From contig NC_068981.1 of NCBI RefSeq assembly GCF_001194135.2, positions 144,221,672 through 144,285,671 on the forward strand: 64,000 nucleotides of DNA. The letters are read 5' to 3'. The notes beneath the pieces were generated by a model, which worked only from the letters and a program-made list of their open reading frames with translations, was not told the origin of the DNA and did no database searches. Shown in pieces: positions 5,587 through 54,919 of this stretch; position 1 is the stretch's first letter, and each line of letters starts with the position of its first letter. The translations under genes and the position numbers were made by a program. Source of the stretch: Octopus bimaculoides. Lineage: Eukaryota.

Positions 5587-5685
5587 CTTTGAACCAAGCC
5601 CTGAAAAATGTCGAAGTGCCCTTGCTGCTGCTCTTAGTAAAATATTCTGGCAAGCTGGTGAACATAAATCAGCAGTCGTAACTTT
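5587..5685 (+). CDS. MINDY4: MINDY4/FAM188B-type deubiquitinase, first coding exon in the window (FEPSPEKCRSALAAALSKIFWQAGEHKSAVVTL)
   Basis: AG at 5585-86 after a pyrimidine tract and GTGAGT donor at 5686; 99 nt, phase 2-2. Resembles the MINDY4 segment as I recall it ([20 protein letters not shown]). No upstream exon with the GGPCG catalytic-Cys motif was found in the window. Confidence 0.9.
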
Positions 5686-7182
5686 GTGAGTATACTTTTA
5701 TACATTTAAATTGTAGTCATTCATATTCAAAGTCACGTGGTTATTCATTTCTTCTTATCAAATGGAATTCCTGATTTCAGTTTTTATTATCTCTTTTAAA
5801 AACAACTTTAAAAATACAGCACAGCAATAAGAAACTTTTTGCAGAGATTTGAAAACTACAGCACAATCCCTCTACCATAATAAATTAAGAATTAGCTTCA
5901 AGTCTATTTATTTATCTTTTTGCTATGTTATCTATTTTGATATGCACTCCTCCAATGCACATCATGTTTTCAACGAATCTAGAGAGCCATATTGTTGAAG
6001 TGTCTCCCTTGATGATGCGGATGCAATAAGATGTCTTTTTTTTGTTGTTGTTGTTATGTTTAGTGTCGAACAGTTTTAATCAGCATTCGTTGATGAAATT
6101 TATGGGACAGAATTACCTATTCAAATGTGTGCAGACATCTTGAAGCTGTTTTACATTAGTTGTTATGCTATACTTCAGTCTGGTTGGAAGCTACACTGTA
6201 CAGTTGCATATTTATTGCCCTCTGTTGGTGCTTTACATCTGGGAGAGGGCCGTTTTTAGTTACTGCTGTTGTTATAGAGGAAAGTGAATTACAAAAACTG
6301 CTAGTGTCAGACAAATTAGTTTATGTTATTTAGGGGCAGCTTTTTACAATCTGAATTCAAATTCCACTGTAGTTCATTTTGCCTTTCATTTTTCTGGGGT
6401 TGATAAAATAAAGTGCCAAGTGCAGGACACTATTTTCCATAATTGACTATTCCCACTCCTTGAAACTTCAGACTTTGTACATGTGTTAGAAACTTTATTT
6501 CTAAAGAGTGATAGATTTACAAAATGGTGAGCACATTGGACAAAGATACCTTGTAGTGTTTCTTTTGGCTCATTATTCTGCCAACATCAACTTTATTTCT
6601 CATTTATCTAGTGTTGATAAAATTAAATTTTGGTCAAGTTCTTGGCTTAATTTATCAACCAAACCTTCCATCAAATTTCAACTTTCAGCAATGTTGTTGT
6701 TATTTAGCCCAGATCAACCTTGATTGAGTAGATGTACAATCAAAGGAACTCCAGCCATGACTATTTATCCTGTCTTCTTTTCTGTATATTTAAGACTGCA
6801 TTATTGAGTATGTCCTTCTTTTTTTTTTCAAGATAAAGTATGATGTAAAAGAGATTTGATTGTCCTTTCTATCAAATTAAATCACTGCATGTTGCCTTCC
6901 TTGATTAGCTCATACAGCTGTTGTTTCAGTCATAGTAACATGGATATTGCTCTTTGCAGACTTTCAGATTGGCATTAATACTGTTGTTATTTAACCAGGC
7001 ACATGCCCATGCAGTGTCCTGTAAAAGTGCCTGTGTGGTGCCACGTAAAAACGCCCAGCATACTCTGTAAAGTGGTTGGAAACCATTCTAAATCAGACTG
7101 AAGCCTGGCGCAACTCCCCAGCTTCCCTGCTCTGGCCAAACTGTCTAACCCATGCCAGCATGGACAACAGATGTTAAAAGAC

Positions 7183-7258
<76 letters not shown>
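7183..7258 (+). repeat. (GAT)n microsatellite, an expanded tail of a LINE-end repeat
   Basis: About 25 GAT units following GATGTTAAAAGAC. Confidence 0.9.
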
Positions 7259-7610
7259 TGACTCTAATCAAGCGGACTTATGATTAAAAGCATTCTATCC
7301 ATGACTATATCTTCTTATTTTCAAGTATAGTGTACATAGAAGTCATAAACAAACTGTGACTCACAGAACTTTCTGAGTGGTGTGCCAATAAAAAATTACC
7401 CTGAATTGTTTTTAGTAGTGCCACCCACTTTATGACGAGTCATGTACTATGTGGCCCACTTTTTGAAAAAGGTTGCCATGGTGCCTGTTCTAGAGAAACT
7501 TTCTAAAATATTTCCTTTTCTTTTTTCAAGTGATAGAATGTAACTTGAGGGAAATTTTGGTTGCATATAAGTTCTTTCACAGATGATTTATCCCTCCAAC
7601 TTCTCTTGCA

Positions 7611-7641
<31 letters not shown>

Positions 7642-8233
7642 AATCTCTTTCTCTCCTTCTCTCTAGCATGTATTAAACTGAAGGGATGGAATTGTTAAAC
7701 TGTTGCTCTCTGTCATATGATTTCTGATAGCACCCAGTATCGTATACATGTGCAAACCAAAAGTCAGAAGCTTCTTGTCATCTTCTTTTGCAATGGTAAA
7801 ACTTTATAGCACCTCTGACATAAATGGAACTTGCAAGGTTTTACAAATATCAATACATAAAATGCAAACACATTAAAAAAAATACATCTTTGTGAACGAG
7901 TTTTTATTTTCGTACCAGAACTCAGCAGTTCGAATTATTGGATAACATTTTTCTTTTCCATATTTTCGTTATTATGTATGTTTGTGTGTGTGTGCATATA
8001 TATAAATTATAAGAAAAATATGGAAAAGAAAACTGCAATCCACACACATTCATGCATATATATAAATACATGCATATATATAAATACATGCATATATATA
8101 AACCATGCATATATCCATACATATATATTAACACATGCACATACTTACACATAATATGTGTGTGACACATATATTTCCATATGTGTGTGTATTATACACA
8201 CACACACACTCTCATTTTCTTACTCTCTCCTTT

Positions 8234-8290
<57 letters not shown>

Positions 8291-8984
8291 TATGTTTTCC
8301 TACTTCAAAATATTTTCTTTTTTCATTTGTATTTCTACTAGGAAATTGCATTGGAGATTTGAATTGCCAAGAGCCAACTTCTTGATTTCATGGCTCTTAA
8401 TATATTCAGGAATAAAATATTCATAATTGATGAATTTTGTTCTGAAATATACATATATGTAATACGTTGAGATGGTTGACAGCTCATACTCGCTACCCTT
8501 TATTCATATTCTATCAGCATGCTATTTCTTCGCACTGTATTTTCATACTATGTATTCTTACCATATCTTTGATTGTATTTCTTCTTTACTTTGTCTCCAT
8601 ATTTCTTGTATATCATGTTCTGTCTTCATACAATAATATTATAAGAAAAGACAATATTACATCTTTTTTATCTCTATAAATACTAACTGAAACGCCTGGT
8701 GGGAATTAAGACATTTTATTGCGAATAATGTAGCTCATGAATACCTTAGACCCAATGTATGATAACATGTCAGGGCTGATCAGTAAATAAAAGGGGTATA
8801 GAGCCCCTTCTCCTTTTATATTACCTTTTTTTTAATCCTTTCTACTAAAGACACAAGGACTGAAATTGTGAGGAAGGGGATTAGTCGATTACATCAACCC
8901 CAGTGTTTTAGTGGTACTTAATTTATCAACCTTGAAGGATGAAAAGCAAAATCAACATCTAATAATAATAATTAAAATAATGAC

Positions 8985-9032
<48 letters not shown>

Positions 9033-9249
9033 AAAAATGATGCACTGATACAAAACAAAGCAGTGACTCTTATGTCTTCTGATCTTAACTGATTGGAAGT
9101 GTTACCATGTACACGTTTTGTCTCAGTGTAAAAGATGGGTTACAACAAATGTTTTGCTCAGTGCCACAGATTTGCATGTTAGTCGCTTGACATTAACTGT
9201 CCATTACTGGCATGTCCATTACTGGTAGACAATAATGTTCCAGCTTCAG

Positions 9250-9620
9250 TATTCAATCCTCAGAAGAGGAGAATTTGGTAAAAAAAAAACATATTTGGTT
9301 TCTGTGCCTATCCTCAGTTTTGGTCATGAATGTTAGGCATGACCGAAAGAATATGATGATGAATTCAAGTGGTTCCTCTGAAAGATCTCTGGAGTGACAT
9401 TACTTCACAGAGTATGTAGCTCAGAGATCAGGGAGTTGAAGTACTACTTCTCTGCATTGTGAGTTCACAGCTCCAGTACTATGGACATGTGATGAGAATG
9501 CCTCAAGAAAGAACTGCAAGATAGATTCTTCAGTCTGATTTAATTGGGAGAAAAATCTAAGGGTAGACCAAAAATGAAATGGTTGGATAATATCCATAGT
9601 CTCACTTGGAAATCCAGCCG
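9250..9620 (+). mobile_element. Decayed RTE-like LINE 3' fragment
   Basis: Frameshifted PILSFGHEC...QLQYYGHVMRMPQERTAR...GRPKMKWLDNI. Confidence 0.7.
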
Positions 9621-9981
9621 AAAAGTATAATGTTGGTTGCTTCTGACAGGACCCATGGAGGAGATGATGGTGGGCTTACAGAAAAAATGAGGTTGTACCA
9701 ATTGTCATTGCAGCCATAGGAACAATGGGGAAAACGCTTGAGAAATGGACAGGAAATATTGGCTTGCAGAAGCACATAGAATACATGCAACTGGCCTGCT
9801 TTGAAATAATAATAATAATCCTTTCTGCTATAGGCACTAGGCCTGAAATTGTGAGGAAGGGATTAAGTCAATTACATTGACACCAGAACTCAACTGGTAC
9901 TTTATTTATCGACCCCAAAACGTGAAAGGCAAAGTCGATCTCATTCTGATTTGTGCACAAGGCTACCAATGCAGTGGAGGG

Positions 9982-10019
<38 letters not shown>

Positions 10020-10642
10020 NNNNNNNNNNNNNNNNNNNNNNNNNNNNNNNNNNNNNNNNNNNNNNNNNNNNNNNNNNNNNNNNNNNNNNNNNNNNNNNNN
10101 NNNNNNNNNNNNNNNNNNNNNNNNNNNNNNNNNNNNNNNNNNNNNNNNNNNNNNNNNNNNNNNNNNNNNNNNNNNNNNNNNNNNNNNNNNNNNNNNNNNN
10201 NNNNNNNNNNNNNNNNNNNNNNNNNNNNNNNNNNNNNNNNNNNNNNNNNNNNNNNNNNNNNNNNNNNNNNNNNNNNNNNNNNNNNNNNNNNNNNNNNNNN
10301 NNNNNNNNNNNNNNNNNNNNNNNNNNNNNNNNNNNNNNNNNNNNNNNNNNNNNNNTGTCACTCCGGTCAGTTATGACAACAAGTGTTCCAGTTGATCCAG
10401 TCAACTGAACAACCTGGTCATGATATCAAGCGTGCAAGTGGCTGAGCACTCCACAAACACGTGTACCCTTAATGTAGTTCTAAGGGAGATTCAGCGTGAT
10501 AGTGTGTGACAAGGCTGGCCCCTTTCAAGTACAGATACTACTCACTTTTCGCCAGCTGAGTGGACTGGAACAACGTGAAATAGTGTGTTGCTCAAGGTCT
10601 CGCAATCATAAGCAAATTACCCTAACCACTAAGCCATGTGCC

Positions 10643-10677
<35 letters not shown>

Positions 10678-11012
10678 TTAACGTCCGTTTTCCATACTAG
10701 TATGAGTGGGATGGTTCCACAAGAGCAAGCCAGGCCGAAGCCTGCACCAGACTTCTGTGACTGTTTTGGCAAGATTTCTACTGCTGGATGCCCTTCCTAA
10801 CACCAACCACTCAGTAGAGAGAACTTAGTGCCTTTTACATGGCACAAGCACAGACGAGGTCAGTTTTGGCAAGGTTTTTACAGCTGGATGCCCTTCTGAG
10901 CATCAACCACTTTATAGTGTGGACTTGATGCTTTTAAGTAGCACCTGCACTGACAGAGTTACCAAGTACTTGCTAGACATAAAAAAAAAATATAGCCAGC
11001 TGATGTTGCTAC

Positions 11013-11055
11013 TTCAGGCTGATGACGAGCAATGACTCAGAAACATGTCCCTGAA
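11013..11055 (+). ncRNA. Minimal type I hammerhead ribozyme motif
   Basis: TTCAGG-CTGATGA-C-GAG-CAATGA-CTC-A-GAAA-C-AT-GTC-CCTGAA. Stem I is 6 perfect bp, the core is intact, helix III is the palindrome ACATGT, and the 10.1/11.1 position is a C.A mismatch. Confidence 0.75.
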
Positions 11056-11209
11056 TGCACACTAGGCTGAGTGGGGGTGCTTGTCTCCCCCTCACAAATA
11101 TAAGGACACAGTCCAGCTTTCTAGGGCTAAATAGCAGCAGTATGATTCCCTTATTGGGACTGTCACATTAAGTTGACAGTATACAACTGCTTTATACACC
11201 CATATATAT

Positions 11210-11433
11210 CATCATCATCATCATCATCGTTTAACGTCCGCTTTCCATGCTAGCATGGGTTGGACGATTTGACTGAGGACTGGTGAAACCGGATGGCAAC
11301 ACCAGGCTCCAGTCTGATTTGGCAGAGTTTCTACAGCTGGATGCCCTTCCTAACGCCAACCACTCAGAGAGTGTAGTGGGTGCTTTTACGTGTCACCCGC
11401 ACGAAAACGGCCACGCTCGAAATGGTGTCTTTT
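11210..11433 (-). mobile_element. (GAT)n-tailed LINE 3'-end/SINE-like repeat, young copy
   Basis: Begins with (CAT)n-GTTTAACGTCCGCTTTCCATGCTAGCATGGG. Many more copies occur in the window, for example at 15590, 20805, 21415, 28525 and 33175. Confidence 0.8.
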
Positions 11434-11997
11434 NNNNNNNNNNNNNNNNNNNNNNNNNNNNNNNNNNNNNNNNNNNNNNNNNNNNNNNNNNNNNNNNNNN
11501 NNNNNNNNNNNNNNNNNNNNNNNNNNNNNNNNNNNNNNNNNNNNNNNNNNNNNNNNNNNNNNNNNNNNNNNNNNNNNNNNNNNNNNNNNNNNNNNNNNNN
11601 NNNNNNNNNNNNNNNNNNNNNNNNNNNNNNNNNNNNNNNNNNNNNNNNNNNNNNNNNNNNNNNNNNNNNNNNNNNNNNNNNNNNNNNNNNNNNNNNNNNN
11701 NNNNNNNNNNNNNNNNNNNNNNNNNNNNNNNNNNNNNNNNNNNNNNNNNNNNNNNNNNNNNNNNNNNNNNNNNNNNNNNNNNNNNNNNNNNNNNNNNNNN
11801 NNNNNNNNNNNNNNNNNNNNNNNNNNNNNNNNNNNNNNNNNNNNNNNNNNNNNNNNNNNNNNNNNNNNNNNNNNNNNNNNNNNNNNNNNNNNNNNNNNNN
11901 NNNNNNNNNNNNNNNNNNNNNNNNNNNNNNNNNNNNNNNNNNNNNNNNNNNNNNNNNNNNNNNNNNNNNNNNNNNNNNNNNNNNNNNNNNNNNNNNN

Positions 11998-12232
11998 CTT
12001 GTGCGGGTGGCACATAAAAGACACCATTTTGAGCGTGGCCATTTTCGTGCGGGTGACACGTAAAAGCACCCACTACACTCTCTGAGTGGTTGGCGTTAGG
12101 AAGGGCATCCAGCTGTAGAAACTCTGCCAAATTAGACTGGAGCCGGGTGTAGCCATCCGGTTGCACCAGTCCTCAGTCAAATCGTCCAACCCATGCTAGC
12201 ATGGAAAGCGGACGTTAAACAATGATGATGAT
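11998..12232 (+). mobile_element. (GAT)n-tailed LINE 3'-end/SINE-like repeat, inverted near-identical partner of 11210-11433
   Basis: Its reverse complement matches 11210-11433 with only a handful of substitutions; it ends GGACGTTAAACAATGATGATGAT. Confidence 0.8.
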
Positions 12233-13165
12233 ATAATTAATCATTGTATCCTGATACACCTCCAACACCATCTGTTTCTCTCTATCTCTCTCTCTCTGTA
12301 CTTCTCTCTAACTCCATCTCACTTCCACCTCTTTTCTTTTCCTACTGGGGTAGCCAAGTATCTTCTCTTTAGTAAGTCATCCATCTCTGTCTCTGTTTTA
12401 CTTTAACCTCTCAACTGGCGTTCTTTCACTACGACTTCCTCTCCTTGTCTTTGTCATGCAAGTTACTTGGTGACCCTGCTGGTGCTGGTGCTAGTGCCAT
12501 GGTAAAAGCGCTAGTGCTGGCACCACATAAAAAGTACCCAGTATATTCCGTAAAGTGGTTGGCATTAGGAAGGGCAACTAGCCATAGAAACCATGCCAAA
12601 GCAGACGGTTAGAGCTTGCTGCAGCTCCGTGTCTTGCCAGCTCCTGTCAAACTGTCCGTCCCATGCCAGCATGGAAAAGGAGCATTAATTGATGATAACG
12701 ATCTTCTACTATGATAATACTCTAGTGTTTTTCTTCCTTCACAATATATGAATGCGAAAGGAAGGGGTGATAGATGAATAAGGAAGGAAGGGGTGATGGC
12801 AAACTGGTTGTGGGAGCATTTCAACTCTGTGTGAGTGTATGTATGTGTGTGTGTGTGTGCACAAGGGAAGTATGTGAATGTTTGTATGTGTGAACCAGCG
12901 TTGTTTCAGTAACAAATGATGATTGATGTCACATCTCAAAAGACAACCTACTAGATAACATTGACAAATGTATTAATTTGATTTGCCATCCATATTCATA
13001 TATAAAATACAACAGTTAGCTGTCATTTTTTATAACACCGGGGGGGTGGGGGCAGCTAGTGATGATAATAATGAATTGCAAAGTTCCACAAAGACTGAGA
13101 GTGTCATGTACAAAGCTCTCAGACCTTGAGTAATTTTGTAACTTCTGCTGAGTAAATGAAATATA

Positions 13166-14381
13166 TGTAGTGAAACTAACACCTCGATCGTCATTATATA
13201 CAAAGAAGCCATCTTCTCTCGCTGTTATAAATATAATCAAGTTCGGGTGTAGTAGAAAACATCTTTCCCTGTCATCACATGACTAATTATTATTTGAAGC
13301 GGCAACTGCTTCGTACCGTTCCCGCCAGAACGCAAACTGACCAATCACAGCTCCTAATAAGGTCACGTGATAGTGTTTTTCTAATACCTCTCTGGAGCCC
13401 CTATTTTGCTTTAAATAGATTAAATTATACCCAGCTAATTCGTCTCGGTTCAGATCTCTTAGAGACCTGTTCCATGTACCACACAGCAGCAGCAGCCAGC
13501 GNNNNNNNNNNNNNNNNNNNNNNNNNNNNNNNNNNNNNNNNNNNNNNNNNNNNNNNNNNNNNNNNNNNNNNNNNNNNNNNNNNNNNNNNNNNNNNNNNNN
13601 NNNNNNNNNNNNNNNNNNNNNNNNNNNNNNNNNNNNNNNNNNNNNNNNNNNNNNNNNNNNNNNNNNNNNNNNNNNNNNNNNNNNNNNNNNNNNNNNCAAC
13701 ACCACTTCAACTACGAACTACAAGATTCGCCACCAGCGTCGCCAACATCGTCAACATGATTTCTATACGTACACCAGCTAACCAAACAACCGCGGCACAT
13801 CTCTCTTCGATTCTGTTTGTGCGATTCACCTTCGCCACGATAGACAACAGACAAGAACCTCAGCCTGCGACGAACATCTGTATACAAGAACCCGGCTTGG
13901 CATGGAAGCCCTAACATCACAACGAGTGATCGCTCTGCCCCACACACTTCAACTTCTTACATACAGACTGTTCCTATTGTGTACTCTAAGAACTGGCAAA
14001 TTCGTATGTGTTACTGACTCTCTTTTCTATCTGCTGTATCTCACGCATTCACATACATTTGTGCACACATTCTTTTGTATACACACTATTCTATTTACAT
14101 GACGGCCTGTCTTTTAATGTGTTTATTATGTCACACTCACACACACACACAGACATACATTTTAATGCAACAATAAATATTCTGTTATTCATCTCTATCG
14201 GTTGTGTTCTATCGTCTTCCTTACTGGCCATTTACGAATTCACTATGTTATCGAAGTATAACATACATATATATCATTTGATATAATTTTGTGTTCGACC
14301 GTGTGACGCGTTTAATAAAAGGAGCCCTGTTTTTCCATTCGTCACCATTTCTCCTTTTGGGTTCGCATGGTCGTTCTTACA
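13166..14381 (+). mobile_element. Probable solo LTR
   Basis: TGTAG...TTACA termini, TATA on both sides (possible 4-bp TSD, weak in AT context), CpG-richer body, CCAAT near 13340 and AATAAA near 14313; an internal gap is present. Confidence 0.5.
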
Positions 14382-14477
14382 TATATATACACACTCGTGT
14401 TTTGGGTTTTATTGTCTTGTTTGTATCACTGAACCTCTGCATATAAATACACAAATACACACATACACATATACATG

Positions 14478-14510
<33 letters not shown>

Positions 14511-14512
14511 TA

Positions 14513-15911
14513 TTAGATTATTCTGAAAATAATGGCCAATTTCAGAAAAATTTTATTCTGGAAAAATTTGATTAGTCAAAGTATGAGCTGTGAACATCTA
14601 TGCATCTCTGCCATTGATCAATGAGATTATTTATAGTTTGTTGATAAAAACCTATTGGCTTTGATGCTAAGAAATCTTCAAAAGCTAATTTCACCTCTGG
14701 TTTGAACCTGAAAGTTTTATCACTTAAAAACGTGTTTAAATATTTTAAAAAACGGTATTGGGTGAAAAATCAGGAGAATATGGAAGATGTAGTAAAGTCT
14801 CATATCTCAAGTCTGTGAGTTTTTGCAGCGTCATTCTTGCAACTTGTGGCTTTGCATTATTGTGGAGCAGAATTGGGCCATGCTGATTCACCAATGCAGG
14901 TCTCATTTTTTGCAAGTGAGCATGCATTTCAGTGAGTTGATTGCAGTAAACCTCTGCTGTAATGCTTTGATTGGCTTCCAGAAAGCTGTAATGGTCAATA
15001 CCAATTGCAAACCACCAGACAATCACCATAATCTTTTGCTGATGCAACTTTGGCTTTGGGAAATGTTTGGGGGATTCATCATGATCAAGCCATTGACCTG
15101 ATCGTTTATGGTTATCATAAAGGATCCACTTTTTGTCACAAGTGACTATTTGGTCAAGAAATGGATCATTGGTGTTTCACAGAAAGAGCATTGAGCACAC
15201 TTCAAAATGCCGAACTTTTTGATTTTCATTAAGCTCATGTGGTATCCATTTATTGAGCTTTTTCACCTTACCATTCTTCTGCAGATTACGTGAGACCACT
15301 GCAATACCATCACCAATTTCTTGAGACATTTCTCTGACACTTCGACTTGGGTTTTGTTCAACAGTTGCTTTCAATTGTTCATTGTCAAGACTGCATAACC
15401 GTCCTCTACCTTCTTCTTCAAGGCTCTCATCCCCACTATGGAATTTCTGAAACCACCTTCATACTGTGCGGTCACTTGTGGATCTCTCTCCCCATGCTCT
15501 ATTGATATTGGCAACAGTTTGAGAGGCATTGTGCCCAACCTTGAACTCATGCAAGAAAAGTAAGCAAAGGTCCTTTTTTATCATGTTTTGGCATTAGGAA
15601 GGGCATCCAGCTGTAGAAACTCTGCCAAATCAAATTGGAGCCTGGTGTAGCCATCTGGTTCACCAGTCCTCAGTCAAATCGTCCAACCCATGCTAGCATG
15701 GAAAGCGGACGTTAAACCACGATGATGATGATGATGATAATTAAGGGAACCTATGCTTCAAGAATGTTTTCTGTCTGAAATAAGTGGAAAATTATTAAAT
15801 ATGCCACTTATTAAGTATATCAAAATTCACTTAAAATATAATTAAAATATTATGATAAAATTGCGTTTCAATACACAACACAGAGCGGCCATTATTTTCG
15901 GAACAACTTAA
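14513..15911 (-). mobile_element. Full-length decayed mariner transposon containing a LINE-tail insertion (about 15590-15738)
   Basis: Imperfect TIRs TTAGATTATTCTGAAAATAATGGCC and GGCCATTATTTTCGGAACAACTTAA, both flanked by TA. Minus-strand mariner motifs WIPHEL, HNNAKP (HDNARP) and YSPDFSP, with stops and frameshifts. Confidence 0.9.
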
Positions 15912-16008
15912 TATTAAAGGATCAAAAATAAATGGTAAATGGAAACTGTGCATTTATTGTTATTGCATTTAATATTGTTTATAATTTTTTCTCTTATGAT
16001 ATATTCAG

Positions 16009-16072
16009 GTCGAGCAGTGCCACACATTTCATTGGCGGCAACAAATGTAAACCAGATCGCCTGACAGAAACG
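16009..16072 (+). CDS. MINDY4: MINDY4 exon (L-SSSATHFIGGNKCKPDRLTET)
   Basis: ttcag|G acceptor and ACG|gtaatt donor; 64 nt, phase 2 to 0, in frame with both neighbours. Aligns to the recalled MINDY4 [20 protein letters not shown]. Confidence 0.8.
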
Positions 16073-18742: not shown

Positions 18743-21159
18743 ATTGAGTGAGAGAGCAGTGCATGCCATCAAGGTAACACTGAGGTAAAATATATGAAGC
18801 CCAGTATACCCATCATGACTACCTGTCTGATAAGAGTATACCAGGCACATGCATCACAGCTATATGTTCATGACATGATGATCTCATATGAAGATAAACA
18901 GCGCATGACCTAGAATTTTCTTCAGGTCAAGTAGCCCATCCTGCTCAAATGATTCCCGAATAAGGTTTGTTTAAGGATGAATGAAACATCCATGTTTCCA
19001 GAGGTGAATTATTCAAACTCCAAAGAATTTCTCTCAAGACATGGTTATGATGCTTCCCCACTACTTCTGCTTGTGATCAGAGATGCACATATTGTCAGCC
19101 ACCAAGGGACATATTCAACTGGTTAAGGTCAAACAACTGACAAGTAAATCTGTGGTATTGAGCAGAATATTTGCTGTAACCCATCTTTTATACCAAGACA
19201 AAACAATGTACATGATAACACTTCCTGTCAGTTAAGATCAGAAGCCATGAGAGCCAGTGCTTGGTACTGTATTAGAGCACTGACAAAATGCTTAGTGATA
19301 TTACGTCTGTCACTCCATTCTGAGTTCAAATTCTGCCGAGGTCAACTTTGCCTTTCATCCTTTCAGGGTCGATGAAAATAAGTACCGGTTGAAAACTGGA
19401 GTCGATGTAATCGACTCATCCCCATCCCCCAAATTACTGTCCTTGTGGTAAAATTTGAAACTGTTATTATTATTATTATTACTATTATTATTATTATTAT
19501 TATTATTATTAAAGGCGGCAAGCTGGTAGAATTGTTAGTATGCCGGGTGAAATGCTTAGCGGTATTTCATCTGCCACTACGTTCTGACTGGCTCCCATGC
19601 CAGTGGCACATAAAAAGCAGCATCTGAATGTGGTCAATGCCAGTATCCTCTGACTGGCTCCCATGTGGGTGGCATGTAAAAAGCACTATCTGAATGTGAT
19701 TAATGCCAGGTTTGCCTGACTGACTCTTGTGCCGGTGGCACCAACAACACTCAGAGTGGTTGGTGTTAGGAAGGGCAACCAGCTGTAGAAACATTGCCAG
19801 ATCAGATTGGAGCCTGGTGCAGCCGCTGGCTCTCCAAACCTCAGTCAACCCGTCTGACCCATGCCAGCATGGAAAATAGATGTTAAACGATGATGCTGAT
19901 TAGTTCATGAATGGTAAGCATTGTAGAATAATAGCATTGTAGACTGAAGGCTTCTAATACACCAGTTACAGCTTCTAACAGTGAGAGTAACAAGGGAGTA
20001 TCTGTAAGCTGGTGCAGAACAAATACCATGACACAGTAACTCAGCAGACTTTGAAAAGCACCTGTCTTTTTTTGGCCAACATTTGTATCTGCCAACTTTG
20101 TGTGAAACACAGACACACATGCATGTAGGTACAAATATGGCTGTTTGGTTTGCAATTACATGGCTTCATGTTCACTGCAGATAGCTGGTAAGCTAGCTGG
20201 CTGGTTGGCTAGTTAGCTGAGTAGTCAGCTGGCTGGCTGGCTGGCTAGATGAATGGATTATTTATTTACTATTTTCTTTGTATTTATTAGAATACTTTTG
20301 AGAAGCTTGGAACTGGTTTCTAACAAAAGTACAGAAGTTCCATTCCTGAAATTTAGATAGAAATAATGACTATTATTACATGTTGCACTGTAAAATATAT
20401 TGTATATTTTTATTGTTCCATTTGCAGATTGTATCTGCAAAGCACATACTTCAGGTCTCTTTCCTTGCCTGAAAATTGAAATTTTTCCTGATTGTCACTT
20501 AGACAATATTAATGTAACCAAGTTCACCAATAATTATTTGTATAAATATGAATTTATAATCAGAATAGACCAGCTGCAGATTTCAAAGTAGTTGTCCATA
20601 TATTTTCTCCTTGCTGAATTTGGAAGAGATTTTCATATCTACAAAGCAGCTAACTTCTATGGCTATATATACATTATACACATATACATATATATACACA
20701 CATATACATATATATATATGTATATGTGTGTATATATATATGTATATGTGTGTATATATATGTATGTGTGTATAATGTATATATATAGTCATACATATAT
20801 CATCATCATCAGCATCATCATCATACATCTGTTTTCCATGCTGGCATGGGTTGGACGGTTTGACAGAACTAGTAAGCTAGGGAGGTGCACCAGGTTCCGA
20901 TCTGATTTGACATGGTTTTTACTGTTGGATGCCCTTCCTAACAGCAACCACTCTAAGAGTGTAGCAGGTGCTTTTTACATGCCACCAGCATGGGTACCAG
21001 ATACATGACACTGGGCATCAGCCAATACTATGATTTCACTTGGTTTGACAGGTCTTCTCAAACACAGCATATTGCCCAACGTTCAAAGGGTGTTTTTTAT
21101 GTGCTAGGATCTCACTTGGCTTGACAGGTTTTCTCAAGCATGACATATCGCCAAAGGTC

Positions 21160-33174: not shown

Positions 33175-33545
33175 TCATCATTATCGTTTAATGTCCGCTT
33201 TCCATGCTAGCATGGGTTGGACGATTTGACTGAGGACTGGCGAACCAGATGGCTACACCAGACTCCAATCTGATTTGGCACAGTTTCTACAGCTGGATAC
33301 CCTTCCTAACACCAACCACTCTGAGAGTGTAGTGGGTGCTTTTACGTGCCACCGGCACGAAGGACAGTTATGCGGTACTGGCAACGACCATGCTCAAAAT
33401 AGTGTATTTTACGTGCCACCTGCACAGGAGCCAGTCCAGCGGCACTGGCAACGATCTTGCTCGAATGACTTTTCACAAGCCAGGAACACGAAGCTGCGGC
33501 ACAAGTGCCAGGAAGGTGACGCTGGTAACGATCACGCTCGAACAG
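33175..33545 (-). mobile_element. (GAT)n-tailed LINE-end repeat with internal repeated TTTTACGTGCCACC units
   Basis: Same family as 11210-11433; it is followed by decayed RT sequence at about 33600-33950 (HADD-like at 33830). Confidence 0.75.
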
Positions 33546-34202
33546 TGGTGCCAAAATCAAACCACTATTCCTGGCATTCATTTACTTCGAAAGGGCGTAT
33601 GAGAGGGTACCATTTAGTAGTCCCTAAAGAAACTTAACATAGATGAATGGCTTATGAGGGCTATACAAGATATGTACAAAGATGCAGTAAGTGAGATTCA
33701 ACAACAATTTCAGTGATGAAATTAGCATGAAGATAGGAACACATCAAGGTTCACTTCTTAGTCTCATTCTGTTTGTCGTAGTCCTATAGGCTATCAGTAG
33801 AGTTTAAGACTAGCTGCGATGGGAACTCCTGCATGCTGATGATCTCTTTCTCAAAGAGTGAATCTGTGGTGGAATTAGAGATTTAATTCCATGCATATAA
33901 ACTAAGCCTGGAATTGTGAGGCCTCAAGTTAAAATTAACTGAGGCTAAGGTTTTAGTTGGTAGGAAAGAAAACAGGTAGAATTATTATTTTCAGCTATAA
34001 GTACAGAACCATGTGGCTGTCTGCTTTTGCAACTTTCAGGGGTACAATCAATTAAATCAAGCCAGCTAAAGCATACCTGTGAGTTCAAAAGCTTAAGTAT
34101 TGAGCATTCTCAGAAAAGGAAGTAAAATAAAAAACAGATTTTAGTTTAAAAAATTAGTTTTGATAATTTCTGAAATAAAGGATAATGGTACATATTGATA
34201 AC

Positions 34203-34609: not shown

Positions 34610-34692
34610 AATTATAATATATTTTATTACTTTATTTCGTTGAACCTTTATATTTTTGTATTTTGTTAATATGCTACATATTTCTGTTGCAG

Positions 34693-34870
34693 GTTGGTTC
34701 TTACTATAAGAACCCAAAATATCCGATATGGATTGTTTGCAGTGAAAGTCATTTCACTGTGCTGTTTTCAATGAGTGACTCACTTGTGAAGGACAATAAG
34801 GCAGAGAAGTTTGATCTTTATTACTATGATGGGCTTGCCAAACAGCAGCAACCTATACGGCTCACCATTG
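34693..34870 (+). CDS. MINDY4: MINDY4 exon carrying the catalytic-His motif ([26 protein letters not shown]...[20 protein letters not shown])
   Basis: ttgcag|GTT acceptor and G|gtaggt donor; 178 nt, phase 0 to 1. CSESHF and [10 protein letters not shown] are MINDY4-type rather than MINDY3-type (GSETHL). Confidence 0.95.
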
Positions 34871-35004
34871 GTAGGTATATGAATTGCTGGAGAAGGAAAG
34901 GTGACAATGGTGGTGGTGGGGGAGGGGAGGAGGAGGAGGAGGAGAAACTGTGTGGATTTAGTTGTTCTTGTAGTTTTTTTTCTTGCATAAACAGCAATTT
35001 TTAT

Positions 35005-38662: not shown

Positions 38663-39528
38663 CAGCGTGTCCCAAAAGTCACTGAGGGGTTTCAGTTTTT
38701 AACAACTTCCTTAACTTTACAAATAAATGCATGAAATTTTGATACAATGTAAAAGACATAATGGAAATTAATATACATTAGTCAAATTTTGCAACACCAC
38801 TACATCACATATGAAAAATGACATTACTTAAATGGCAGTCATTTTTGGCTTTGCACACCTGTGCTTTTTCCAAAACTTGCACCATAACACCCTCAAGAGT
38901 TTCAGACCCTACTTCTCTGATTTCTCTATTGATGTTCTTCAGTTGCACCAGGGTCTCTGGTTTGCTGATGCAAACCCTTTCTTTCAGGTATCCCCACAAG
39001 AAAAAATATGGGGTAGTCAAGTCTTGGGAATGTGAAGGCCAGTTGACATTGCCTTAGCAGGAGATTATTCTCTCTCGAAAGCACTGCCGTAGCAACTGCA
39101 TTGTTTCCTTTGTGGTACGAGCAGTTGCCCCATCTTGCTGGAACCATGTGTGAGGTCTACTTTGAATGGCTGGGTGCAAAAAGGTCTCAATCATGGATAC
39201 CTGAAAATGAGGGTTTACATCAACAAACCGGAGACCATGGTGCAACTGCAGGAGAACATCAATAGAGAAATCAAAGAAGTAGGGTCTGAAACTCTTGAGG
39301 GTGTTATGGTGCAACCTTTGGAAAGAGCACAGGTGTGCGAAGCTGAAAATGGCTCCCATTTAAGTGATGGCATTTTTCATATGTGATGCAGTGGTGTTGC
39401 AAAATTTAACTTATGCATATTAATTTCCATTATGTCCTTTATATTATATGAAAATTCTATATATTTATTTGTAAAGTTAAGGAAGTTATTAAAAATTGAA
39501 ACCCATCACTGACTTTTGGGACACCCTG
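38663..39528. mobile_element. Tc1/mariner foldback element made of two inverted transposase 3' ends
   Basis: TA-flanked CAGCGTGTCCCAAAAGTCA...TGACTTTTGGGACACCCTG. Both arms encode WGYLKxRVxxxKPETxVQL...HLSxxIFHM in opposite orientations. Confidence 0.88.
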
Positions 39529-54033: not shown

Positions 54034-54368
54034 ATTTATAGCATGGTTACTAATAATATATAAAGCCCTTACATCCTTACTGTACAATTGCTTGATTCCA
54101 CATATGGAGAGTAATATATGATATGTTACCAGAGGACCAGAAGGGTTCCTGGAAAGGAATACACGACTGCAAATAAATAGTAGCGAACTGAACAATTATA
54201 CGACGATGATTTGTATGTTCATTCTCAATAAGTTTCAGAAGATTCAAACGTGAATATGCTAACCCTGTTGTATTTCGTCGTTGCTGAACAACTTCTTTTA
54301 GGCAAATGTGTATTGAAAACACACTCGATTCATTAGCGTAAGGAGGTTTTGGAACACACGGCGTAAAC

Positions 54369-54416
54369 CTTTGACTGACCAGACACAACGATGTCGAAAC
54401 AGCAGGTGTCTCAAAG
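54369..54416 (+). ncRNA. Type I hammerhead-like motif with a G8C substitution
   Basis: CTTTGA-CTGACCA-GACA-CAACGA-TGTC-GAAA-CA-GCAGG-TGTC-TCAAAG; all three stems pair perfectly. Confidence 0.7.
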
Positions 54417-54919
54417 TTATCTTACGCTAATGAATCGAGAGTATTCTGAACACACATTCGTCTGAAAAGAGTTGTTCTATGACAAAACATAGCATCAATT
54501 AACATATTTACGTTTGAAATCTGCCGGAAAGTATAAAGAATGAATATGAATATCTTCGTTTTGATTCTCGCAGTTCATTGTGGAAATGACGATTTTTTTT
54601 TTTATCGGCCGGCTGATATCAGCATGCATCAGTAAATAATTTGCGGAATTATGAACATGAACTGCAAACACTTATTAGATTCATTAGTCCGTAAATCTTA
54701 CACTAATGAGCCGAGTGTTATGAACACACATTCGTCTGAAAGGGGAAGTTTTACTCCAATGGCGAAATACAACAGCAATTAGTACATTCACTTTTGAATC
54801 TGCGAGAACATATTGAGAACGAATCGTCGAATCATCGTTTTGTCTCTCGCTCTTCATCGTGCACATGACGATTTATTAACAATTATAAAAGACGTTAAAA
54901 AAGAGGAAAACAAACCTTA

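What the first reader, a model, noticed from the sequence alone, without database searches (positions are those of the whole stretch)
11013..11055. Core-intact minimal hammerhead ribozyme in sense orientation inside a MINDY4 intron
Seen: stem I TTCAGG/CCTGAA (6 bp), CTGATGA, stem II GAG/CTC, GAAA, palindromic helix III ACATGT and a GUC cleavage triplet (cut after 11049). Every catalytic core base is present; the only defect is a C11026.A11039 mismatch at the base of stem II. Established: minimal type I hammerheads with a palindromic helix III occur in Penelope-like elements and small non-autonomous ribozyme retroelements, and generally cleave efficiently as dimers. Inference: it is transcribed with the MINDY4 pre-mRNA (intron 5686-16008) and could cut it. 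More speculative: A.C mismatches are favoured ADAR sites, so editing of A11039 to I would close stem II. If the host is a coleoid cephalopod, that would make this an editing-gated ribozyme.
Basis: partly seen in the sequence, partly recalled or inferred. Interest (0 to 1): 0.72.

Follow-up and report, generated by a model that had tools for sequence, protein, structure and literature searches.

The report
Solitary hammerhead ribozyme relic in intron
A 58-base stretch inside an intron of a MINDY-3/4-family deubiquitinase gene is a real copy of the classic animal "type I" self-cutting hammerhead RNA, but it stands alone and has a mismatch at a key base pair, so it is most likely a weak or dead leftover of a mobile element and not an editing-controlled switch.

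Summary
The motif is at 11013-11055 (+) exactly as described. With its flanks (11004-11061) it has the full layout of the canonical metazoan type I hammerhead: a 5-bp outer stem, a UAC/U internal loop 1, a 6-bp stem I, CUGAUGA, a 4-position stem II, a 6-nt loop 2 (CAAUGA), GAAA, a one-pair helix III capped by CAUG, and a GUC site. A covariance model built only from the axolotl HHR_Amex1 ribozyme finds it as the top hit in the window (32.4 bits, E about 2e-7; next hit 15.7 bits). Chance is therefore excluded, although no Rfam hammerhead model reports it. It lies in sense in a 10.3-kb intron of a MINDY-3/4-family gene. It is a single copy with no tandem partner. Its helix III type works mainly as a tandem dimer, and the conserved 10.1-11.1 pair is C.A. 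My best reading is a stranded, attenuated or dead retrozyme/PLE-lineage hammerhead. The editing-gate idea has no support in the sequence: helix II is far too short for ADAR. It cannot be excluded without RNA data. A second, weaker hammerhead-like motif with C instead of G at core position 8 lies at 54361-54427.

The parts
11004..11009 (+). Outer (closing) stem of helix I, 5' strand UGuUGC; U11006 is bulged
   Evidence: R2 alignment; the same pairs appear in the MFE folds
11010..11012 (+). Loop 1, 5' side: UAC. Sm1/N79 has UAC here and axolotl Ax330 has UGC
11013..11018 (+). Stem I, 5' strand UUCAGG (positions 2.6-2.1)
11019..11025 (+). Core box C3 U4 G5 A6 U7 G8 A9 (CUGAUGA)
11026..11029 (+). 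Stem II, 5' strand CGAG. C11026 is position 10.1, where the family has G
   Evidence: pair flagged as non-standard
11030..11035 (+). Loop 2 CAAUGA, 6 nt. Sm1 has CAAAUA and Ax330 has CAAAAA
11036..11039 (+). Stem II, 3' strand CUCA. A11039 is position 11.1, where the family has C. C11038-A11039 would be CpG if position 11039 was once G
   Evidence: the CpG-decay origin is inference
11040..11042 (+). Core G12 A13 A14
11043..11048 (+). Helix III: A15.1-U16.1 pair capped by the palindromic tetraloop CAUG. GAAACAUGUC is identical to axolotl HHR_Amex1
11049..11049 (+). C17; the predicted scissile bond lies between 11049 and 11050 (GUC triplet)
   Evidence: position in the alignment to ribozymes whose cleavage sites are marked in the source; cleavage itself was not tested
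11050..11055 (+). Stem I, 3' strand CCUGAA (positions 1.1-1.6)
11056..11061 (+). Loop 1, 3' side (U11056), then outer stem 3' strand GCACA
5686..16008 (+). Host intron of a MINDY-3/4-family gene. The upstream exon ends at 5685 (GTGAGT follows) and the next exon starts at 16009 after TTCAG. The reading frame is kept across the junction

Best explanation
This is a genuine hammerhead ribozyme sequence of the canonical metazoan type I class. That class includes newt/axolotl satellite hammerheads, Schistosoma Sm-alpha and the non-LTR retrozymes, which are thought to be non-autonomous relatives of Penelope-like elements.

In its native setting such a ribozyme sits once per 170-400-nt tandem unit. 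Two neighbouring copies on one transcript pair their palindromic helix III segments into an extended helix. Each copy then cuts after C17, which releases unit-length RNAs that are circularised and reverse-transcribed.

The copy here is stranded alone, in sense, in a 10.3-kb intron of a MINDY-3/4-family gene, between later SINE insertions. It is transcribed as part of the pre-mRNA (inferred). It lacks a partner for dimer formation, has only a one-pair helix III, and has C.A in place of the conserved 10.1-11.1 pair. It is therefore most likely catalytically dead or very slow, with no role in the host gene.

Shown here: the sequence and structure membership, the solitary state within the window, and the orientation. 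Inferred: the retroelement origin, the low activity, and the idea that the mismatch arose by one transition (for example CpG decay of CUCG to CUCA) and was tolerated or favoured because an active ribozyme in a long intron would lower mRNA output.
For: Membership:
- R2, built only from axolotl HHR_Amex1 with its loop 1 and outer stem, finds 11004-11061 at 32.4 bits, E = 1.7e-7. 15 of 16 model pairs form, and 21 of 25 unpaired positions are identical.
- R1, built from coral, mussel and two axolotl retrozyme hammerheads, gives 20.6 bits, E = 0.0014.
- The element-by-element layout equals Sm1/N79 as printed in PMC12550524.

Solitary state: no second copy by exact or 3-mismatch search, BLAST or either model inside the intron.

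Weak monomer:
- The hammerhead secondary structure with its one-pair helix III scores -0.8 kcal/mol against an MFE of -8.4. Core bases A6-G8 are paired to CAU with probability about 0.85.
- The intermolecular helix III is only -4.6 to -6.0 kcal/mol.
- Axolotl ribozymes with this helix III are weak as monomers and efficient as dimers (PMC7229834; PMC6155905).

Other support:
- G10.1-C11.1 is described as highly conserved (PMC4209133).
- Vertebrate retrozymes are depleted from introns, which the authors read as selection against genic insertion (bioRxiv 10.64898/2026.07.22.740005).
- An active hammerhead placed in a 17.5-kb intron knocks down the spliced RNA (PMC12550524).
- PLEs are abundant in octopus genomes, if that is the host.
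Against: - No Rfam hammerhead family reports the site, even at E <= 10 on 101 bases.
- No related retroelement sequence, tandem unit or PLE reading frame is visible around it, so the retroelement origin rests on family resemblance only.
- A mismatch at the base of helix II is not necessarily lethal. Axolotl HHR_Amex2 has U.U there, exists in about 60,000 copies and self-cleaves (22% in 1 h as a monomer, better as a dimer). Minizymes without helix II keep some activity.
- Loop 1 and loop 2 look intact, and in other hammerheads these loops raise activity strongly. Slow cleavage is therefore possible.
- 1095 bases of the intron are assembly gaps and could hide a partner.
- Thermodynamic folding has no power here. 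The known-active Ax330 57-mer also fails to give the hammerhead fold as its MFE (z = -0.07).
Confidence: 0.65

Rival explanations
1. It is a working, domesticated intronic hammerhead, like HH9 in RECK or HH10 in CTCL of amniotes. It cleaves the MINDY-family pre-mRNA at a low constitutive rate, and the C.A position forms a protonated A+.C wobble.
For: Sense orientation in a long intron. Complete core plus loop 1 and loop 2 layout. Intronic type I hammerheads conserved in amniotes are known (PMC6155905). A natural family with a mismatch at the same pair is active.
Against: The one-pair helix III has no partner. No conservation data could be obtained. Retrozyme hammerheads are depleted from introns in vertebrates. 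The site is flanked by SINE insertions, as expected for neutral intron sequence.
Confidence: 0.15
2. It is an editing-gated ribozyme. ADAR converts A11039 to inosine, which closes helix II with a C-I pair and switches on cleavage of the pre-mRNA.
For: A opposite C is a favoured ADAR context and the 3' neighbour is G (established knowledge, not tested here). A 217-nt, 97% complementary inverted SINE pair 160 nt downstream could bring ADAR to this part of the intron. Watson-Crick variants at 10.1/11.1 occur in cricket satellite hammerheads. The held literature describes no natural example, so it would be new.
Against: Helix II is 3 pairs plus the mismatch, far shorter than the roughly 15-20 bp duplex ADAR needs, and no long-range complement to the site exists in the window. 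The 5' neighbour C is disfavoured. C10.1-I11.1 reverses the conserved G10.1-C11.1, whose G10.1 helps form the A9/G10.1 metal site (established knowledge). Repairing the pair does not cure the helix III problem: the A27G variant still misfolds.
Confidence: 0.03
3. It is a chance match to a low-information motif with no hammerhead ancestry.
For: Descriptor-level matches arise at 1-71 per Gb per strand in random sequence. Reviews warn that relaxed hammerhead searches give many false positives (PMC6155905). There is no Rfam hit.
Against: Together they give E = 1.7e-7 with a model trained on an axolotl sequence.
Confidence: 0.02
4. It is a small C/D-box snoRNA-like RNA: UGAUGA at 11020-11025 as the C box and CUGA at 11051-11054 or 11067-11070 as the D box.
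For: Several archaeal C/D sRNA families give weak Rfam matches over 11002-11072 (7-14 bits).
Against: All matches are far below the gathering scores (36-54 bits). The boxes are about 50 nt apart, too short for a eukaryotic snoRNA. There is no terminal stem next to the boxes. The boxes are explained by the hammerhead core and stem I.
Confidence: 0.01

Closest known systems
Axolotl/newt satellite hammerhead HHR_Amex1 (non-LTR retrozyme Ax330; PMC7229834)
   Same: Every element has the same length (5-bp outer stem, 3/1-nt loop 1, 6-bp stem I, 7-nt box, 4-position stem II, 6-nt loop 2, GAAA, CAUG-capped one-pair helix III, UC). GAAACAUGUC is identical. 21 of 25 unpaired positions are identical.
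   Different: The axolotl ribozyme has a paired G10.1-C11.1, where this copy has C.A. The axolotl ribozyme sits in about 330-bp tandem repeats with about 60,000 copies, whereas this copy is solitary in the window and inside a gene. The stem sequences are unrelated.
Schistosoma mansoni Sm-alpha hammerhead (Sm1; engineered form N79, PMC12550524)
   Same: UAC/U internal loop 1 directly outside a 6-bp stem I, CUGAUGA, a 4-bp stem II, and a 6-nt loop 2 (CAAAUA against CAAUGA here).
   Different: Sm1 has G10.1-C11.1. N79 carries an engineered long helix III that makes it a fast monomer.
Axolotl HHR_Amex2 (Ax353)
   Same: A natural type I hammerhead with a mismatch (U.U) at the base of helix II and a palindromic helix III.
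   Different: The mismatch type differs. Amex2 has a two-pair helix III, occurs in tandem arrays and is shown to cleave.
Minimal hammerheads of Penelope-like elements (PMC4209133)
   Same: Type I topology, palindromic helix III, dimer logic and retroelement association.
   Different: PLE min-HHRs have a long helix II (6-8 bp), a short helix I (4-5 bp), an extra base between positions 9 and 10.1, and no loop-loop layout. This copy has the canonical 6/4 layout with loops, and no PLE reading frame is nearby.
Conserved intronic hammerheads of amniotes (HH9 in RECK, HH10 in CTCL; PMC6155905)
   Same: A type I hammerhead in sense orientation inside an intron of a protein-coding gene.
   Different: Those are defined by deep conservation and intact pairs. 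Conservation could not be tested here, and the 10.1-11.1 pair is broken.

Membership tests
Hammerhead ribozyme, canonical metazoan type I | Conserved core CUGANGA / GAA / A15.1-U16.1 / H17 | tested here: met
   All 13 core positions are present
Hammerhead ribozyme, canonical metazoan type I | Three helices around the core with helix I open (type I). Helix I about 6 bp, helix II about 4 bp, short helix III with a palindromic loop | tested here: met
   6 bp, 3 bp plus C.A, and 1 bp plus CAUG. The layout is as described in PMC4209133
Hammerhead ribozyme, canonical metazoan type I | G10.1-C11.1 pair closing helix II | tested here: not met
   C11026 lies opposite A11039 and is flagged as a non-standard pair. 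Natural exceptions exist (U.U in HHR_Amex2)
Hammerhead ribozyme, canonical metazoan type I | Loop 1 (internal loop six pairs from the core, with a closing stem) and loop 2 able to make tertiary contacts | tested here: met
   The layout and most bases match Sm1/N79 and Ax330. The contacts themselves cannot be tested
Hammerhead ribozyme, canonical metazoan type I | Score at or above the Rfam gathering threshold of a hammerhead family | tested here: not met
   No hammerhead family is reported at gathering or at E <= 10
Hammerhead ribozyme, canonical metazoan type I | Site-specific self-cleavage after position 17 | not testable with these tools
   Needs an in vitro transcription assay or RNA-end mapping
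Non-LTR retrozyme | Head-to-tail repeats of 170-400 bp, each with one hammerhead | tested here: not met
   No second copy of the motif or of its 217-bp surroundings in the window. Gaps of 336 and 564 N nearby leave a small loophole
Non-LTR retrozyme | Expression as linear and circular unit-length RNA | not testable with these tools
   No transcript data
Penelope-like element pLTR hammerhead | Location in the terminal repeat of an element that encodes RT plus GIY-YIG endonuclease | tested here: inconclusive
   No long reading frame near the site. The only nearby RT remnant (about 9100-9810) looks like the C-terminus of a non-LTR (LINE) RT by eye. No PLE library was available
Penelope-like element pLTR hammerhead | Min-HHR layout: helix II 6-8 bp, helix I 4-5 bp, an extra base between positions 9 and 10.1, no loop-loop layout | tested here: not met
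   The layout is 6-bp helix I and 4-position helix II with loops
Domesticated intronic hammerhead (HH9/HH10 type) | Sense orientation in an intron | tested here: met
Domesticated intronic hammerhead (HH9/HH10 type) | Conservation of the ribozyme in orthologous introns across species | not testable with these tools
   No eukaryotic genome collection is on hand. Protein, ORF and pattern look-ups returned nothing usable
C/D-box snoRNA | C and D boxes brought together by a terminal stem, length at least about 60-70 nt, family-level score | tested here: not met
   Only 7-14-bit matches to archaeal families with gathering scores of 36-54

The most novel reading that the evidence does not exclude
The C10.1.A11.1 position acts as a conditional switch in an otherwise complete, loop-bearing type I hammerhead. 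Either A-to-I editing of A11039, with ADAR recruited by the 217-bp inverted SINE duplex 160 nt downstream, or protonation to an A+.C wobble closes helix II. This lets the ribozyme cut the MINDY-family pre-mRNA, making it a natural editing- or pH-gated self-cleaving RNA.
Probability: 0.03. Interest if true: 0.85.

Novelty: new member of a known kind. Interest (0 to 1): 0.3.

Why it matters
If the host is a cephalopod, as the SINE content suggests to me (not tested), this shows that the canonical loop-bearing type I hammerhead lineage known from flatworms, cnidarians, mussels and amphibians is also present there and can end up in sense inside genes. I found no paper in the held library that describes hammerheads in cephalopods.

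The window holds two such motifs. Each is one substitution away from a canonical ribozyme (C.A at 10.1/11.1 here; C for G at position 8 at 54375-54381). That fits the idea that active self-cleaving RNAs are selected against inside transcription units.

As a single locus it is ordinary. It becomes notable only if cleavage or editing at the site is shown.

Tried and rejected
- Rfam at gathering thresholds and at E <= 10 on 701 and 101 bases gave no hammerhead family, only weak archaeal C/D sRNA and miRNA noise. The C/D reading was rejected.
- Folding-energy z-scores for the 43-, 58- and 120-nt versions are unremarkable. I discarded this test because a known active axolotl hammerhead behaves the same way.
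- RNAcofold cannot represent the double-hammerhead dimer because it is a pseudoknot in the concatenated order. I used only the energy of the helix III duplex.
- I searched for relatives outside the window. Two pattern scans of JGI metagenome contigs found nothing. Exact-product look-ups of the two ORFs that overlap the site are not on record. A protein search with the MINDY exon gave one unrelated metagenome protein and no cephalopod orthologue, so orthologous introns could not be fetched.
- MAFFT misaligned N79, and the axolotl pair with flanks (A1, A3, A4). I therefore used a four-sequence core alignment (A2) and a single-sequence model (A5).
- I considered the PLE min-HHR register, with C11026 as the usual extra base after A9, G11027-C11038 as 10.1-11.1 and A11039 as an insertion. 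I dropped it once the canonical 4-position stem II and 6-nt loop 2 alignment to Ax330 and Sm1 was seen.
- My relaxed descriptor (one core mismatch at most) missed the second motif at 54.4 kb. The covariance model found it.
- My last literature search was badly posed and returned only cephalopod papers.

Full report
**Observation.** The sequence at 11013-11055 (+) reads TTCAGG CTGATGA C GAG CAATGA CTC A GAAA CATG T C CCTGAA. A descriptor scan of both strands returns it as the only hammerhead-type match in the window. It has a 6-bp Watson-Crick stem I, a 3-bp stem II flanked by C11026/A11039, and a fully self-complementary ACATGT between GAA and C17.

**Is it more than chance?** I scanned 1 Gb of random sequence with the window's base composition using the same descriptor.
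- The loose form gave 71 matches.
- With stem I >= 6 bp and a usable helix III it gave 8 matches.
- With a palindromic helix III plus the mismatch it gave 1 match.

That is roughly 1e-2 to 1e-4 per 64-kb window, but several to hundreds per multi-Gb genome. Rfam does not help. No hammerhead family is reported at the gathering thresholds, nor at E <= 10 on 701 bases or 101 bases.

**The decisive evidence lies in the flanks.** PMC12550524 prints the Schistosoma-derived N79 ribozyme. It reads GCAGG TAC ATCCAG CTGATGA GTCC CAAATA GGAC GAAA ... TC CTGGAT T CCACTGC. The window reads (11004-11061) TGTTGC TAC TTCAGG CTGATGA CGAG CAATGA CTCA GAAA CATG TC CCTGAA T GCACA. The shared layout is an outer stem, a TAC/T internal loop directly outside a 6-bp stem I, a 4-position stem II and a 6-nt loop 2 of the form CAAnnA.

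The supplement of PMC7229834 prints four cloned retrozyme hammerheads. Axolotl Ax330 (HHR_Amex1) has the same length in every element and the identical GAAACATGTC. I built two covariance models that do not contain the candidate.
- R1 comes from the coral, mussel and two axolotl ribozymes (alignment A2). It scores the site at 20.6 bits, E = 0.0014, which is no better than descriptor level.
- R2 comes from Ax330 alone with its loop 1 and outer stem. It scores 11004-11061 at 32.4 bits, E = 1.7e-7, and the next hit in the window is 15.7 bits.

In the R2 alignment 15 of 16 pairs form and 21 of 25 unpaired positions are identical. The only flagged pair is C11026.A11039. The tool warns that E-values of these quickly calibrated models are rough, but a 17-bit gap over the best background hit is robust. 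I conclude that this is a real member of the canonical metazoan type I hammerhead lineage. It is not the 'minimal' PLE form, which has a long helix II, a short helix I and no loop-loop layout (PMC4209133).

**Context.**
- The window is a draft assembly with 14 runs of N.
- An exon ends at 5685 and is followed by GTGAGT. The next exon starts at 16009 after TTCAG, and the frame is kept across the junction.
- These two exons, joined to a third at 34.7 kb, hit Pfam MINDY-3_4_CD at 1.4e-33. The ribozyme strand is therefore the transcribed strand of a 10.3-kb intron. Whether the gene is MINDY4 rather than MINDY3 was not tested.
- The 217 bp around the motif (10991-11207) lie between SINE copies at about 10644-10990 and 11208-11433. 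They have no other copy in the window.
- No PLE-type reading frame is nearby. The RT remnant at about 9100-9810 looks like the C-terminus of a non-LTR (LINE) reverse transcriptase.
- The host organism was not identified by any tool. The SINEs look like octopus SINEs to me from memory only. PLEs are abundant in octopus genomes.

**How it most likely works, or fails to work.** In newts, axolotl and viroids, hammerheads with a one-pair helix III capped by a palindromic tetraloop are poor monomers. They cleave efficiently when two tandem copies on one RNA form an extended helix III (PMC6155905; PMC7229834).
- There is no second copy in the intron or elsewhere in the window, apart from a different motif 43 kb away.
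- Pairing two separate pre-mRNAs through ACAUGU is worth only -4.6 to -6.0 kcal/mol. That corresponds to a Kd of about 0.06-0.6 mM, far above any nuclear RNA concentration.
- In the monomer ensemble the core bases A6-U7-G8 pair with CAU of helix III with probability about 0.85. The hammerhead secondary structure has negligible weight. This kind of calculation has little power, however, because active Ax330 behaves similarly.
- The 10.1-11.1 pair is C.A, although this pair is described as highly conserved G-C.

A mismatch at this pair is not always fatal. HHR_Amex2 has U.U there and cleaves 22% in an hour as a monomer and well as a dimer. Minizymes lacking helix II keep some activity.

Taken together, the solitary state, the weakest class of helix III and the broken closing pair point to a dead or very slow ribozyme. 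A single transition would explain the defect. CUCG to CUCA is a CpG decay, and UGAG to CGAG is the alternative path; both are inference. An active hammerhead in a long intron reduces spliced RNA, and vertebrate retrozymes are depleted from introns. Loss of activity here would therefore be tolerated or favoured.

**The editing hypothesis.** An A.C mismatch with a 3' G is a good local ADAR context (established knowledge). However:
- The duplex around A11039 is only four positions long.
- The 5' neighbour is C.
- No long complement to the site exists in the window.
- Inosine would create C10.1-I11.1, the reverse of the conserved pair.
- Repairing the pair in silico leaves the helix III problem untouched.

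The one fact in its favour is a 217-nt, 97% complementary inverted SINE pair 160 nt downstream in the same intron. That duplex would be a strong ADAR substrate and could raise local enzyme occupancy. I put this reading at about 3%. The held literature shows no natural editing-gated ribozyme, so it would be new if true.

**Second motif.** R1 also finds 54369-54416 (+) at 20.9 bits, E = 0.0011. R2 scores it at 14.3 bits, E = 0.088, and Rfam reports nothing there. Its elements are:
- a 6-bp outer stem;
- a 6-bp stem I;
- a 4-bp stem II with G10.1-C11.1;
- loop 2 CAACGA, one base different from the candidate's CAAUGA;
- GAAA;
- a 3-bp helix III;
- a GUC site.

Its 5' box is CUGACCA, with C at position 8 where the family has the essential G8. 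Position 7 is free in the family, so this is also one substitution from a canonical core. The motif sits at the apex of a 72-nt imperfect inverted repeat, in the first of two direct repeats of about 277 bp. The second repeat lacks the 77 nt that hold it. Its MFE fold is a competing hairpin. I regard it as a possible second decayed hammerhead, not as proven.

**Verdict.** The identification as a hammerhead is supported and made stronger. The functional claims (cutting the pre-mRNA, an editing gate) are not supported by the sequence but remain untested. It is a new member of a known kind and of modest interest.

Noticed in passing
window 54361-54427 (+): Second hammerhead-like motif: outer stem GCGUAA/UUACGC, stem I CUUUGA/UCAAAG, 5' box CUGACCA (C at position 8 instead of G), stem II GACA/UGUC, loop 2 CAACGA, GAAA, 3-bp helix III, GUC. 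R1 gives 20.9 bits, E = 0.0011; R2 gives 14.3 bits, E = 0.088; Rfam reports nothing. Its MFE fold is a competing hairpin.
   Followed up: partly
window 54200-54880: Nested repeat structure around the second motif. A 72-nt imperfect inverted repeat lies at 54286-54357 / 54406-54477. Two direct repeats of about 277 bp (72-83% identical) are present, and only the first carries the hammerhead-like 77 nt. Further inverted repeats lie at 54203-54295 and 54745-54838. It could be a retrozyme-like or foldback element.
   Followed up: partly
window 11217-11433 and 12016-12232: Two SINE copies in opposite orientation, 217 nt and 97% complementary, on either side of a 564-N gap in the same intron, 160 nt downstream of the ribozyme. 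They would form a long RNA duplex (a likely ADAR substrate), or they may be an assembly artefact.
   Followed up: partly
window 10644-10990 and 11208-11433 (also about 1126-1596, 6987-7271, 19567-19848, 20592-21008, 33275-33637): Many copies of one SINE family with a (CAT)n/(ATG)n end and internal 70-100-nt repeats. From memory they resemble octopus SINEs; the host was not verified.
   Followed up: no
window 14745-15047 (-) and 39054-39359 (-): Likely mariner-type transposase remnants. The first hits Pfam Transposase_1 at 3.9e-15. The second was judged from its ORF translation only and was not searched.
   Followed up: partly
window about 9100-9810 (+): Frame-shifted remnant that looks like the C-terminus of a non-LTR (LINE) reverse transcriptase. 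It is followed by a SINE-like segment and a (TA)n run that ends in an assembly gap.
   Followed up: no
window 11002-11072 (+): Eight weak Rfam matches to archaeal C/D-box sRNA families (7-14 bits; gathering scores 36-54). They are caused by the UGAUGA and CUGA words of the hammerhead and its flank.
   Followed up: yes
window 34663-34890 (+): Exon that encodes the conserved [11 protein letters not shown]...FDLYYYDG segment of the MINDY-3/4 catalytic domain. The best database relative is a 103-aa metagenome protein at 49% identity.
   Followed up: partly
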